Shown: positions 12,101 through 58,467 of the stretch, piece after piece
Layout of the letters: each line of letters starts with the position of its first letter
Position numbering within the stretch: position 1 is the first letter of the stretch
Virus record (IMG/VR): IMGVR_UViG_3300050821_013430
Span: 248,001 to 312,000 of that record
Length of the DNA: 64,000 nt
Strand: one strand, 5' to 3'
Notes under the pieces: generated by a model
What the model was told of the DNA's origin: nothing
Database searches by the model: none
Seen by the model: the letters and a program-made list of their open reading frames with translations, nothing else
Made by a program: the position numbers and the translations under genes

Positions 12101-12300
12101 TGGGTTTCTCCGCATTGAGGACATCGTTCTACTACGACAAAGCGTAATTGGCTATAACTGCCTGGCAGCCCACTGATCTTGTAGTCGGGGTTGTGCACTT
12201 CTGCGTCATACACCTGTCCCAAAACCAGTTGCATCTCCTTATCGAAGTATTCCGGCGAGGCATTGAACCTGTTGGAGACATCAATGCACTTGACTTTCAT
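12097..12300 (-). CDS. CPQCG-tag family, MKVKCID type
   Basis: MKVKCID...LGQVY...RFVVVERCPQCGETH*. Confidence 0.8.
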   Translation of the reverse strand: MKVKCIDVSNRFNASPEYFDKEMQLVLGQVYDAEVHNPDYKISGLPGSYSQLRFVVVERCPQCGETH

Positions 12301-12482
12301 GGATGTATCTCTCCACATTGGGAACAAGCATTACTCGGCACAATTTGGAAGCGGTGCTTGAACCACCACCCAGCACCTTTCAAATGATAACCATCACCGT
12401 ATTCAGAAATCACTTCATAAACCCTGCCTTCAAATAATGGCATACGAATACAATCACACCCTTCTACACACTTGACTTTCAT
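12297..12482 (-). CDS. CPQCG-tag family, MKVKCID type
   Basis: MKVKCVE...GRVYEV...WFKHRFQIVPSNACSQCGEIHP*. Confidence 0.8.
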   Translation of the reverse strand: MKVKCVEGCDCIRMPLFEGRVYEVISEYGDGYHLKGAGWWFKHRFQIVPSNACSQCGEIHP

Positions 12483-40664: not shown

Positions 40665-41033
40665 CTACTGAGAATGAACGAGACCACATTGAGAACAGGC
40701 GTTTTCTTCAACCACTACAAAACGATCTTGAAACCAAGGGTTGCCGGATACTTCTGCCAACACGTACCCGCATTGCGGACACGCTCCATAGTAGTCGATA
40801 GTGTTTCGCACCGCCCTCTCATGAGCATAATGACCTTTCAGCATCTCGATCCTTTTCCCGTTCTTGACGAACTCTTTCCAGGAGTCGCCAGGGAATAGGT
40901 CTTGTCTCAACGCAGTGGTGCGGTCATAGATGCCCTTGGCGCAGGAGCAACAAAACTCGTACCAGCCAGGACTAAACTCTTTGTCTTCGCAAGAAGAGTA
41001 CTGGCCGCACATGTCGCACTTGAACTTGATCAT
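40665..41033 (-). CDS. CPQCG-tag family, fused double-tag unit
   Basis: CDMC...CCSC...CPQCG-YVLAEVSGNPWFQDRFVVVEENA-CSQCGLVH. Confidence 0.78.
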   Translation of the reverse strand: MIKFKCDMCGQYSSCEDKEFSPGWYEFCCSCAKGIYDRTTALRQDLFPGDSWKEFVKNGKRIEMLKGHYAHERAVRNTIDYYGACPQCGYVLAEVSGNPWFQDRFVVVEENACSQCGLVHSQ

Positions 41034-51831: not shown

Positions 51832-52082
51832 TTAGACCTCATGAATATGCAGGCATTGGGGGCAGGCGTGGCTCTTATGCTGCTCTAAGAGAGGCCAATG
51901 TCGCCAAACTCGTTCTTCAACGGATACATCTCAAAACGAGTATCCTTATGCAGGTTGGTGTAGTAGTCCCAACCGTTCTTGCGCTCTAACATGAGGACAT
52001 CGTGGTAGATGCCATCATCGCTGGGGGCGATCCAAAGTCGTAGGGGGCCATAGCAATGATCAACGCCGGATACTATCGACAT
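51832..52082 (-). pseudogene. probable frameshifted tag-family unit
   Basis: ORF 51885..52082 stops 5' of an out-of-frame CPQCLHIHEV* tag at 51832..51864. Confidence 0.45.
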
Positions 52083-56284: not shown

Positions 56285-56680
56285 TCATCTGGTTGTGCAC
56301 TCCGCGTAAAAGGTGGCCGTGTAATACTGAGGAGCAACAACCATCGTCCAAGTCTTGGACTGATGGTCGGGAGCATCGGACTTGCAGGTGATGGTAGAGC
56401 CGATTGGCGTATGACCGTTGCTGCAAGCAAAGCCGGTGGTGTAGAACTTGTCATCCGAACTCGGAGAGATGCCAAGACGAACGCAAGCCCAATTGGCTTT
56501 GATCATCCGAGCAGGAAGAGAGACGCCAACGGTTTGACGAGGATCCTCCGGATACTCTACCTTGCCACGAGCATCCTCCACATAGAAGGAGTAAGTGGTA
56601 TGCAGAGGCTCGTCCGCCTTGATGGTGGTGGCGGTAGAGAGACAGGCGGTAATGAAACACAGAGAGAGAAACTTGACCAT
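56285..56680 (-). CDS. secreted hypothetical protein
   Basis: Signal-peptide-like N-terminus; AAGGAG SD. Confidence 0.65.
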   Translation of the reverse strand: MVKFLSLCFITACLSTATTIKADEPLHTTYSFYVEDARGKVEYPEDPRQTVGVSLPARMIKANWACVRLGISPSSDDKFYTTGFACSNGHTPIGSTITCKSDAPDHQSKTWTMVVAPQYYTATFYAECTTR

Positions 56681-56947: not shown

Positions 56948-57223
56948 TCAACCTCCAAACGAAACCAACCAAGCCCAACTCAGATCCGCATTCAGCGGAT
57001 ACATCTCGTTCCTACCAGATAACTGGCGGGCGTCCCAGTATCGTCCCTTGTCGTCCAACCACCAGTTTTTCAGGGTGGGGAGATCGCAAGGACGCAGGAC
57101 GCTCATCGAGAAGTCTCCCCGAAACTCGGAGAGCATGACGATCCGACAGTCGGGATGGATCAGATCAGCAGAAGGAATGGGTGCCGGGCGCCATACCAAT
57201 TCGGATAGTGAGCGAATGATCAT
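56948..57223 (-). CDS. hypothetical protein (untagged)
   Basis: MIIRSL...EMYPLN; EMYPL shared with 51885..52082. Confidence 0.6.
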   Translation of the reverse strand: MIIRSLSELVWRPAPIPSADLIHPDCRIVMLSEFRGDFSMSVLRPCDLPTLKNWWLDDKGRYWDARQLSGRNEMYPLNADLSWAWLVSFGG

Positions 57224-57462
57224 GGATGGAGGTTTCCGCATTGGGGACAGATATGCTTGGCTTTATGCGCATTCAACTGCTCTGTCCATCCATCGAAACC
57301 CATCGCAAGACTGCCCTTCAACTCCTCGATATAACTCACGCTAAACTGATAGAGCCTTTGCAGTTCGGTCGCGCAAGAGAAGCAAACGATCTGATAGGAA
57401 GGACTATAAGCCCTGACGGGGCTGCACTTTTTACCACAGCAGTAGCAATCGAACATGATCAT
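57220..57462 (-). CDS. CPQCG-tag family, CxxC-CxxC type
   Basis: CYCC...CFSC...CPQCGNLHP*. Confidence 0.8.
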   Translation of the reverse strand: MIMFDCYCCGKKCSPVRAYSPSYQIVCFSCATELQRLYQFSVSYIEELKGSLAMGFDGWTEQLNAHKAKHICPQCGNLHP

Positions 57463-57468
57463 CTCCGT

Positions 57469-57705
57469 TCAGTGTTTGAGACCACACTGGGGGCATCGTG
57501 CAAGGACGTCCAGTTGGGACTCCCAGTATGTAGACCACGCCACTCCGTCGTGTTGCTTGTAGAAGATGGGGTAATCTCGCTCCCAATCGCAGCCGATGTA
57601 GTCGTAGACACGCTTGGAACAAGCGAGACAGGCTATCTTGGGCGAATACGAGGAAAGGCCATAGGGCTTATGACAAGTCGTTCCACAGAATATGCACTTA
57701 TGCAT
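57469..57705 (-). CDS. CPQCG-tag family, CxxC-CxxC type
   Basis: CIFC...CLAC...CPQCGLKH*. Confidence 0.8.
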   Translation of the reverse strand: MHKCIFCGTTCHKPYGLSSYSPKIACLACSKRVYDYIGCDWERDYPIFYKQHDGVAWSTYWESQLDVLARCPQCGLKH

Positions 57706-57949
57706 GTAGATCTCCACATTGAGGGCAATGGCCCATCCTGACTTTGACTACCGAGACAGCAAGATCCAATCTGTCCGCGCTCCCAATACTACTTTCCCAT
57801 GTCCATCCGTTTTTGATTCCCCAATCAAGGGGAGGGAATCGACCACAATACTCTTTGTACACCGGCTGCAAACACTTGGCACAAAGGATCTTCTCACAAG
57901 CCGATAGGCTCCTGTCAATGAAGACCTTGCAGATCATGCAATTAGCCAT
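57698..57949 (-). CDS. CPQCG-tag family, CxxC-CxxC type
   Basis: CMIC...CAKC...CPQCGDLHA*. Confidence 0.8.
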   Translation of the reverse strand: MANCMICKVFIDRSLSACEKILCAKCLQPVYKEYCGRFPPLDWGIKNGWTWESSIGSADRLDLAVSVVKVRMGHCPQCGDLHA

Positions 57950-57986
57950 GATGTAGCCCTCCACATTGGGGACAGCGGATGATCAA
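57942..57986 (-). other. 'empty' tag-only mini-ORF (14 codons, TTG start)
   Basis: TTG ATC ATC CGC TGT CCC CAA TGT GGA GGG CTA CAT CAT GGC TAA = (M)IIRCPQCGGLHHG*. Confidence 0.6.
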
Positions 57987-58264
57987 TGGACTTCTCCGCA
58001 CTGAGCGCATCTTACGCCCTGTTTATGGGCCTTATCGATATACTGCTCCCAATTATCGGGATACAGGGTGCCATCGGTATTGGGATACCACTCATCGTAG
58101 TTGGCTTTACATCTCTCCACCTCAGACGGAGAGTACTCACCATAAACAGCAGGAGAACAAGTCTTGCAAACCGCCAGCGGAGAATAGCCAACAAACGAGG
58201 CAGCATGAACGCGGTAAAGAGGTTTCAAGCAGAGAAAGCAGATATGAGTAGGGTTAGTGTTCAT
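57983..58264 (-). CDS. CPQCG-tag family, CxxC-CxxC type
   Basis: CFLC...CKTC...CAQCGEVH*. Confidence 0.8.
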   Translation of the reverse strand: MNTNPTHICFLCLKPLYRVHAASFVGYSPLAVCKTCSPAVYGEYSPSEVERCKANYDEWYPNTDGTLYPDNWEQYIDKAHKQGVRCAQCGEVH

Positions 58265-58467
58265 TGGCATAGTCCTATCTGGTTAGAGACGAGGCCGGAG
58301 CCAAGAATGGCCAAGGCCACACCCCATACGAAGAGGGCAATGAATAGGTAGAGGAAGGCATAGTTGACCGGATCTGTTTTGATCCGAGCGTCTTTATGCA
58401 GGTAGGCAAGGAAGACGAAGACAAAGGCGCTGACCACGAAGTAGAGGATGTTCCACCAGTACATCAT
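58261..58467 (-). CDS. small membrane protein
   Basis: Two TM segments; coupled to tag. Confidence 0.6.
   Translation of the reverse strand: MMYWWNILYFVVSAFVFVFLAYLHKDARIKTDPVNYAFLYLFIALFVWGVALAILGSGLVSNQIGLCQ

What the first reader, a model, noticed from the sequence alone, without database searches (positions are those of the whole stretch)
57942..57986. 'Empty cassette': a 14-codon ORF that is nothing but the tag
Seen: directly after CAQCGEVH* comes TTG ATC ATC CGC TGT CCC CAA TGT GGA GGG CTA CAT CAT GGC TAA. Its TTG overlaps the previous stop, and its GGAGGG and CATG give the SD and start of the next member. Its first residues (IIR) match the start of the untagged gene at 57223 (MIIRS), which also follows a tag. 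Inference: a unit whose body was deleted, or a minimal acceptor unit before insertion. It preserves translational coupling through the array and shows the tag behaves as a discrete module.
Basis: partly seen in the sequence, partly recalled or inferred. Interest (0 to 1): 0.72.

Follow-up and report, generated by a model that had tools for sequence, protein, structure and literature searches.

The report
Orphan gene stub in phage array
The 14-codon "tag-only" reading frame is real, but it is most likely the leftover end of a lost gene in a ~100-copy family of small zinc-knuckle proteins of a 473-kb soil phage, kept because that end carries the ribosome-binding site and start codon of the next gene.

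Summary
On the minus strand, 57986→57942 reads TTG ATC ATC CGC TGT CCC CAA TGT GGA GGG CTA CAT CAT GGC TAA. It lies between two full members of a family, and the junction is identical in the four contigs whose DNA could be read. The "tag" (C-x-Q-C-G-x-x-H, then 0-6 residues and a stop) ends 96 minus-strand frames of a 472,749-bp uncultivated phage. It sits on unrelated predicted bodies. It is conserved as protein, not DNA: Cys, Gln and His codons follow background usage. In 53 junctions the next gene's Shine-Dalgarno lies inside the tag's codons.

Best explanation: a deletion or replacement scar. A strain about 99.5% identical differs from the window at 40.7 kb by a segment whose two breakpoints fall in tags, and the window's version there is a tandem double tag. 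Other orphan tags arise by frameshift (51832), nonsense mutation (L050) and body loss (an 18-codon ORF outside the window).

The "acceptor unit" reading is not supported: no tyrosine recombinase, no DNA-level site, no RNA structure. Whether the 14 codons are translated is untested. No relative of intermediate divergence covers the locus.

The parts
57942..57986 (-). The 14-codon orphan ORF LIIRCPQCGGLHHG* (TTG start, TAA stop)
   Evidence: Read directly. The frame is open for only 26 codons stop to stop.
57942..57974 (-). Intact tag CPQCGGLHHG*. It scores as a typical family tag (rank 58 of 96).
   Evidence: Leave-one-out PSSM score 24.3 against a median of 25.3.
57958..57962 (-). GGAGG Shine-Dalgarno of the downstream gene, encoded by the Gly-Gly codons of the tag, 8 nt before ATG 57949
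   Evidence: In 53 junctions the SD of the next gene lies inside the tag coding sequence.
57698..57949 (-). Downstream member, 83 aa, MANCMICK...CPQCGDLHA*. Its ATG lies 8 nt before the TAA of the orphan ORF.
   Evidence: AF2 model pLDDT 80, pTM 0.70.
57983..58264 (-). Upstream member, 93 aa, ending CAQCGEVH*. It is atypical because no ATG-started gene begins until 33 nt after its stop.
57994..57997 (-). GGAG in the upstream gene's tag, 7 nt before the TTG. It is a possible SD for the orphan frame.
   Evidence: Read directly. This is the same geometry as other junctions.
40665..41033 (-). Comparator: a 122-aa ORF with an internal tag (CPQCGYV, 40781-40761), a 19-residue class-B-like stub and a terminal tag (40697-40665). 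It is the product of a tag-to-tag replacement or deletion relative to strain L038.
   Evidence: blastn breakpoints and translations.
51832..51930 (-). Comparator: an orphan tag (...EQHKSHACPQCLHIHEV*) in a different frame from its body, which ends ...DIGLS* at about 51885. The next member's ATG follows its stop directly.
   Evidence: Three-frame view. The tag is degenerate, rank 92 of 96.
57220..57705 (-). The next two members of the local array (78 aa each), showing the typical overlapping junctions
56948..57223 (-). Untagged 91-aa gene starting MIIRS. It has no paralog in the genome.
   Evidence: tblastn against the whole genome.

Best explanation
The 45-nt frame is the orphaned 3' end (a scar) of a former member of a family of about 100 small phage proteins that all end in a C-x-Q-C-G-x-x-H zinc-knuckle tail. 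In this family the last 20-30 nt of each gene also encode the Shine-Dalgarno and the start codon of the next gene. A deletion or replacement that removes a gene is therefore only tolerated if it leaves that end behind. The body of the former gene was lost by recombination or deletion with an end point at or near the tag, and the upstream gene's stop now abuts the stub. Today the stub serves as the translation-initiation region (GGAGG, 8 nt, ATG) of gene 57949-57698. Shown: the sequence, the family, the dual coding/RBS role of tags, and a tag-bounded rearrangement and other orphan tags in near-identical strains. Inferred: that this particular stub arose by such an event, and that retention of the RBS explains its survival. 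Open: whether ribosomes also translate the 14 codons from the TTG after terminating on the upstream gene.
For: 1. The tag is a typical family tag. It lies on the family's strand, inside an array, directly between two full members.
2. Of 96 tags, 58 are overlapped by the next ATG. In 53 junctions the next gene's SD lies inside the tag codons. The Gly codon is skewed to GGA, 56% against a 28% background (p 1.5e-5). The orphan has the standard -8 junction.
3. There is a direct precedent. L038 is 99.4-99.9% identical on both flanks. It has 493 nt (two gene bodies) where the window has 58 nt. The left breakpoint is inside a tag (after CPQCGYV) and the right breakpoint is at the next tag. The window's product is a tandem double tag.
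4. Orphan tags arise in other ways too. One is frameshifted at 51832 and one is an 18-codon ORF, MTSCGCCDRSCPQCGEIH, that keeps both knuckles. One follows a TGG>TAG nonsense mutation in strain L050, with 6 mismatches in the last 60 nt of that gene against 0 in the first 120. In these four orphan cases the next start is at or within 8 nt of the orphan's stop.
5. The segment holding the orphan (membrane gene, 57983, stub, 57698) is absent from the syntenic relative L034, so this part of the array is in flux.
6. There is no recent duplicate of the stub anywhere in the genome.
Against: No relative of intermediate divergence covers the slot. All copies found are at least 99% identical and carry the same junction, so the lost gene itself was never seen. 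The tag is a perfect consensus, whereas the frameshift orphan at 51832 has decayed. The loss is therefore either recent, or the CPQC part, which the RBS does not need, is under selection. The frame of the stub coincides with the usual coupling positions (TTG at -4, ATC at -1), which also fits a translated ORF. In distant relative L047 a full-length member appears to start with just such a TTG.
Confidence: 0.62

Rival explanations
1. The 14 codons form a functional micro-ORF. Ribosomes terminating on gene 57983 would reinitiate at the overlapping TTG and translate the peptide. This would either relay translational coupling to gene 57698 or produce a free 14-residue Cys2-His2 knuckle peptide.
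For: There is a GGAG 7 nt before the TTG. The tag is an intact consensus. An ATG-started, doubly coupled 18-codon mini-ORF exists elsewhere. A TTG-overlap start appears to be used by a full-length member in L047. The junction is invariant in all strains seen.
Against: A TTG at -4 follows automatically from CAT+TGA and occurs at 12 of 96 tags. The downstream gene has its own GGAGG at ideal spacing, and the junction RNA is unstructured (z -0.75), so no relay is needed. All strains are at least 99% identical, so their invariance carries no weight. No gene caller reports it.
Confidence: 0.2
2. An old tandem duplication of the upstream gene's own tag (R-C-x-Q-C-G-x-x-H twice), with the second copy later put out of frame by a 1-nt change that created the TGA.
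For: Both tags are preceded by Arg and are 12 codons apart. Inserting one base after CAT would put them in one frame (read). An in-frame double-tag protein exists at 40665-41033.
Against: By hand alignment of the two tags as read, they are about 49% identical at DNA level and differ at most synonymous sites. No extended match was found by blastn-short. An untranslated copy that old should have decayed. The double tag at 40.7 kb arose by fusing different genes, not by duplication.
Confidence: 0.07
3. An empty acceptor site of a cassette system (integron-like), awaiting insertion of a new body.
For: The strain-level replacement at 40.7 kb is bounded by tags. The arrays have no promoter-like sites.
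Against: G000 has no tyrosine recombinase, while the control found the family in 14 of 14 genomes. Cys, Gln and His codons of the tag follow background usage, so there is no conserved DNA site. There is no significant structure. Only 3 of 96 tags are orphans, and each has an ordinary mutational explanation.
Confidence: 0.03
4. A chance ORF or an assembly artefact.
For: None.
Against: The motif has 0 matches in shuffles and 0 on the plus strand. Independent assemblies from several samples agree.
Confidence: 0.01

Closest known systems
Lineage-specific expansion of Zn-ribbon proteins in jumbo phages (Bacillus phage G, about 35 copies; PMC7824862)
   Same: Both are a very large phage genome carrying dozens of paralogous small Cys-knuckle proteins of unknown role.
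   Different: Here there are about 96 copies. The shared element is only a C-terminal C-x-Q-C-G-x-x-H tail on different predicted folds. One member used as query gave no tblastn match in 50,697 GenBank phage records, and there is no Pfam or PHROG family.
CPxCG zinc knuckles of rubredoxin and zinc-ribbon proteins, and small CPxCG proteins of haloarchaea (Pfam PF07754 HVO_2753_ZBP; own knowledge)
   Same: The CPxCG knuckle is present. In the class A model the tag forms a terminal beta-hairpin. In classes A and B further invariant Cys residues could complete a metal site.
   Different: Gln and the following His are invariant, and the motif always sits at the extreme C-terminus. Class C has no conserved fourth ligand. 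Pfam scores are far below threshold (12-17 bits against 33). Metal binding was not tested.
Translationally coupled overlapping genes (ATGA, TGATG) in phage and bacterial operons (own knowledge)
   Same: Starts and stops overlap, and the SD lies inside the upstream coding sequence.
   Different: The SD is provided systematically by one conserved protein motif (Cys-Gly-Glu/Gly codons), so a protein tail and an RBS are the same DNA. The orphan is a stub that keeps only that function.
Conserved gene-boundary ('linker') sequences proposed as recombination points in mosaic phage genomes (modular theory of phage evolution; own knowledge)
   Same: Short conserved sequences at gene ends coincide with exchange points between strains.
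   Different: Here the conserved element is coding and is conserved at protein level. Only one tag-bounded event was observed, and another strain indel is not tag-bounded.
Integron gene cassettes and attC sites
   Same: Both are arrays of short, promoterless, same-strand genes, each ending in a recurrent element.
   Different: There is no integrase, no DNA-level or structural conservation of the element, and the element is translated as part of the protein.

Membership tests
C-x-Q-C-G-x-x-H-tailed small proteins of this phage clade (uncharacterised) | C-x-Q-C-G-x-x-H within 6 residues of the stop, on the array strand | tested here: met
   CPQCGGLHHG*, with a PSSM rank of 58 of 96.
C-x-Q-C-G-x-x-H-tailed small proteins of this phage clade (uncharacterised) | A body of about 55-200 residues in the same frame upstream of the tag | tested here: not met
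   Only 4 codons lie between the TTG and the tag, and 16 codons back to the previous stop.
C-x-Q-C-G-x-x-H-tailed small proteins of this phage clade (uncharacterised) | SD and start of the next gene embedded in or abutting the tag | tested here: met
   GGAGG lies 8 nt before the ATG, with a -8 overlap as in 8 other junctions.
CPxCG zinc-knuckle / zinc-ribbon proteins | CPxCG knuckle motif | tested here: met
   CPQCG is present.
CPxCG zinc-knuckle / zinc-ribbon proteins | A second knuckle in the same chain that completes a four-ligand site | tested here: not met
   The orphan has only C, C, H, H within 9 residues. Full members of class A have invariant C4, C7, C23 and C26, and class B has C5.
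CPxCG zinc-knuckle / zinc-ribbon proteins | Score above the curated threshold of a Pfam zinc-ribbon family | tested here: not met
   The best hits reach 12-19 bits against cut-offs of 25-34.
CPxCG zinc-knuckle / zinc-ribbon proteins | Metal binding | not testable with these tools
Integron-type cassette / acceptor site | Tyrosine recombinase (IntI-like) encoded by the element | tested here: not met
   PF00589 has no match in G000, while the control found it in 14 of 14 genomes.
Integron-type cassette / acceptor site | Recombination site conserved as DNA or as folded structure | tested here: not met
   Cys, Gln and His codons of the tag follow background usage. The junction fold has z -0.75.
Integron-type cassette / acceptor site | Exchange of gene content exactly at the recurrent element | tested here: inconclusive
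   One strain-level replacement has both ends in tags. Another indel is not tag-bounded.
Translationally coupled junction | Start codon overlapping or abutting the upstream stop, with an SD 5-10 nt upstream | tested here: met
   The 5' side has GGAG, 7 nt, then TTG overlapping TGA. The 3' side has GGAGG, 8 nt, then ATG 8 nt before TAA.
Translationally coupled junction | Reinitiation actually occurs | not testable with these tools
   No RNA or ribosome data were available. The listed runs appear to be DNA (kind given as 'DNA?' or unknown), and no RNA run was shown to hold the sequence.
Phage G-type Zn-ribbon expansion | Sequence homology to Zn-ribbon families of isolated phages | tested here: not met
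   tblastn of one member against 50,697 phage records found no match. This is a single query with limited sensitivity.

The most novel reading that the evidence does not exclude
The C-x-Q-C-G-x-x-H tail may be a portable end-module with three roles at once. It would be a C-terminal metal knuckle shared by about 100 otherwise unrelated small proteins, marking them for a common partner or fate. Its codons would supply the ribosome-binding site of whatever gene follows. Its conserved codons would also act as preferred recombination points. Together these would give a huge phage an integrase-free, cassette-like way to add, swap and delete small genes while keeping every gene expressed. Tag-only frames such as 57942-57986 would then be the empty slots left behind.
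Probability: 0.2. Interest if true: 0.7.

Novelty: new variant of a known kind. Interest (0 to 1): 0.42.

Why it matters
On its own the 14-codon frame is probably a scar. It points, however, to an undescribed and very large family: about 96 copies in one complete 473-kb phage genome and dozens more in metagenomes, with no Pfam or PHROG entry. In this family a single short protein tail is appended to different folds, and its codons double as the translation signals of the next gene.

That coupling predicts which deletions a densely packed phage genome can tolerate. It also explains why gene stubs persist. The strain comparison at 40.7 kb shows one such rearrangement in nature. If tags prove to be preferred breakpoints, this would be a simple mechanism for rapid turnover of accessory genes in huge phages.

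Tried and rejected
- **Close relatives of the flanking genes.** The word-indexed protein search found only a 98% copy. The viral-contig locus search found nothing. Megablast to GenBank phages found nothing.
- **Tag-plus-stop DNA pattern in IMG/VR.** It gave 19 stretches. The only kin, G001, is a collinear fragment of the same phage that ends before the locus. The other hits are unrelated contigs selected by the pattern itself and were ignored.
- **Contigs of outside homologues** (P0016, P0030, P0117, P0023, P0046, P0099, P0007, P0026). None reaches the equivalent slot at intermediate divergence. An apparent missing gene in L035 and L036 was only an uncalled gene.
- **Searching metagenome records by handle.** These records are not held.
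- **Reads.** Only assembled contigs were available. They show no alternative joints, and no RNA data were found.
- **Recent duplication of the stub.** Rejected, because only the 16-nt tag core matches elsewhere.
- **RNA structure or promoter at the junction.** None found.
- **Fold searches.** Class A has no match. Class B has only weak SH3/KOW-like resemblance.
- **Zn co-fold.** The tool did not fold it, so it is not evidence.
- **The 'IIR = MIIRS' clue.** The untagged gene has no paralogs, and the string recurs at unrelated sites.
- **Insertion of gene 57983 into a tagged membrane gene.** Considered and set aside, because the frames do not match by my own count.

Full report
**1. What is there**

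The feature lies on the minus strand. Window 57986→57942 reads TTG ATC ATC CGC TGT CCC CAA TGT GGA GGG CTA CAT CAT GGC TAA, which translates to LIIRCPQCGGLHHG*.
- The TTG overlaps the TGA of a 93-aa gene (58264-57983) that ends CAQCGEVH*.
- GGAGG (57962-57958) lies 8 nt before the ATG (57949) of the next 83-aa gene, which ends CPQCGDLHA*.
- The frame is open for only 26 codons from stop to stop. An ATG at 58010 would give 22 codons.

**2. Reality of the feature**

The window is positions 248001-312000 of a single-contig virus record of 472,749 bp. The record is rated 100% complete. Its terminase is only about 27% identical to any isolate's.

The motif C.QCG..H occurs 78 times on the minus strand. 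It occurs 0 times on the plus strand and 0 times in 20 shuffles.

The junction is reproducible:
- The exact 93-aa protein is found on 7 contigs from at least 6 samples, one of them a second near-complete assembly of 472,404 bp.
- The next called gene always starts 34 nt after it.
- The 91-nt junction is identical in L001 (98.96% identical strain), L048 and L049.
- Laid contigs show no joints or indels here.

An assembly artefact is excluded. All these copies are at least 99% identical, so their agreement says nothing about selection.

**3. What the tag is**

A regex scan finds 96 minus-strand frames ending C-x-Q-C-x(2-3)-H plus 0-5 residues and a stop. They lie between genome positions 210 and 392 kb. 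A broader C-x-Q-C motif is found 120 times on the minus strand and 11 on the plus strand. About 108 of those 131 hits lie within 10 residues of a stop.

With the tag removed, 94 bodies fall into 50 BLAST clusters, with best identities of 30-44%. Three classes were aligned:
- **Class A** (28 window members). Invariant residues are C4, C7, C23, C26, C75, Q77, C78 and H82. The AF2 model has pLDDT 80 and pTM 0.70. It shows an N-terminal hairpin, two helices and the tag as a terminal hairpin. It has no fold match.
- **Class B.** Invariant residues are C5, C56, Q58, C59, G60 and H63. The model has pLDDT 82 and five strands. It is weakly SH3/KOW-like.
- **Class C.** It has no conserved fourth Cys or His.

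Pfam and PHROGs have no family for any class. A profile search of 1.84 billion proteins found about 60 outside proteins of 70-108 aa. Nearly all have the same architecture and tail. One member used as query found nothing in GenBank phages.

So the tag is a protein-level module: a CPxCG-type knuckle with an invariant Gln and His. Metal binding is inferred, not shown (one search gave no result).

**4. The tag's DNA also serves translation**

Cys, Gln and His codons in the tag follow background usage. There is therefore no sign of a DNA-level site at these positions. Two codons are skewed: Gly to GGA (56% against 28%, p 1.5e-5) and Pro to CCT.

Junction geometry for the 96 tags:
- 58 are overlapped by the next ATG (ATGA 39 times, -8 eight times, -1 ten times).
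- 73 have the next ATG no more than 10 nt beyond the stop.
- 54 of those 73 have an SD-like 4-mer, and 53 of these lie inside the tag codons, most often at the Gly codon.

The orphan's 3' junction is a standard -8 type. The local array has no promoter-like sites, and the junction RNA is unstructured (z -0.75).

**5. Origin**

No recent duplicate of the stub exists. Only the 16-nt tag core matches elsewhere.

The best evidence comes from another locus.
- L038 is from the same sample as L001. It is 99.9% and 99.4% identical to window 41620→40762 and 40703→39313.
- Between these two blocks L038 carries 493 nt where the window carries 58 nt.
- L038 has three normal genes, ending …CPQCGYVHGIN*, …CPQCRKVHP* and …CPQCGLVHSQ*.
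- The window has one ORF: …CPQCGYV|LAEVSGNPWFQDRFVVVEE|NACSQCGLVHSQ*.
- Both breakpoints are in or at tags, and the product is a tandem double tag separated by a stub of a class-B-like gene.

Other orphan tags:
- 51832-51864 is out of frame with its body and has decayed.
- An ATGA- and TGATG-coupled 18-codon ORF, MTSCGCCDRSCPQCGEIH, lies at L043:67-123.
- In strain L050 a class B member carries a TGG>TAG mutation, with 6 mismatches in its last 60 nt and none in the first 120.

In these four orphan cases the next start sits at or within 8 nt of the orphan's stop. The syntenic relative L034 lacks the whole segment of membrane gene, 57983, stub and 57698. True relatives' fragments show no orphans among 16 tags.

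**6. Interpretation**

The stub is most likely a deletion or replacement scar. It was kept because it is the initiation region of gene 57698-57949 (confidence 0.62).

A translated micro-ORF is not excluded (0.2).
- For it: GGAG lies 7 nt before the TTG, the tag is intact (rank 58 of 96), and a TTG-overlap start seems to be used by a full gene in L047.
- Against it: a TTG there is a by-product of CAT+TGA, seen at 12 of 96 tags, and the next gene has its own SD.

An old tandem duplication is unlikely (0.07). By hand alignment the two tags are about 49% identical and differ at most synonymous sites.

An integron-like acceptor is close to refuted (0.03). There is no tyrosine recombinase, no DNA site and no structure.

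**7. Comparison and novelty**

The nearest published parallel is the expansion of about 35 Zn-ribbon proteins in Bacillus phage G (PMC7824862). No paper mentions CPQCG in this sense.

The stub itself is ordinary gene decay in a coupled operon. The family is undescribed, as is the triple use of its tail as protein end, RBS and, in one observed case, both breakpoints of a strain-level replacement.

The decisive comparison could not be made, because no relative of intermediate divergence across this slot exists in the collections searched.

Noticed in passing
L043:67-123 (minus); G000 340466-340522, outside the window: An 18-codon ATG-started ORF, MTSCGCCDRSCPQCGEIH*, is coupled by ATGA to the gene before and by TGATG to the gene after. 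It keeps an N-terminal knuckle and the tag but has no body. In distant relative L047 a full-length member follows the homologue of the upstream gene.
   Followed up: partly
window 40665-41033 (minus) versus L038:588-1391: Strains about 99.5% identical differ by a tag-to-tag replacement: 493 nt with two genes in L038 against 58 nt in the window. In the window this gives a fused 122-aa protein with an internal and a terminal tag.
   Followed up: yes
window 51832-51930 (minus): The tag CPQCLHIHEV* is in a different frame from the body that precedes it, which ends ...DIGLS* at about 51885. This is a frameshifted member or a pseudogene, and the tag sequence is degenerate.
   Followed up: partly
L050:3597-3782 versus window 12297-12482: In a strain about 2.4% divergent, a class B member has a TGG>TAG nonsense mutation. 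All 6 mismatches of that gene lie in the 60 nt after the new stop.
   Followed up: partly
L050:5156-5379 versus window about 10923: A 78-aa predicted membrane-protein gene is present in the divergent strain and absent from the window. Its breakpoints are not in tags.
   Followed up: no
whole genome G000, 210-392 kb, minus strand: 96 frames end in the same C-x-Q-C-G-x-x-H tail on at least three unrelated predicted bodies. No Pfam or PHROG family matches them, and about 60 further members occur in metagenomes.
   Followed up: partly
tags genome-wide: Pro in the tag is encoded by CCT in 57% of cases and by CCA in 5%, against a background of 29% each. Unlike the GGA skew of Gly, this has no obvious explanation.
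   Followed up: no
L045:73-627 (minus); G000 328222-328776: A 184-aa tagged protein has a very Cys-rich middle and a run of about 14 Glu residues. It is unlike the other members.
   Followed up: no
L047:273-528: A full-length member has no in-frame ATG. Its only plausible start is a TTG overlapping the upstream stop (cATTGA), and the metagenome gene caller did not call it.
   Followed up: partly
contig of P0023 (no DNA available): A relative has an N6/N4 methyltransferase and a LAGLIDADG endonuclease on the opposite strand, inserted between the small-gene array and UDG. The window has neither there.
   Followed up: no
window 58261-58467 and 56285-56680 (minus): Untagged genes are interspersed in the array: a 68-aa two-helix membrane protein and a 131-aa protein with a lipoprotein-like signal peptide.
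   Followed up: no
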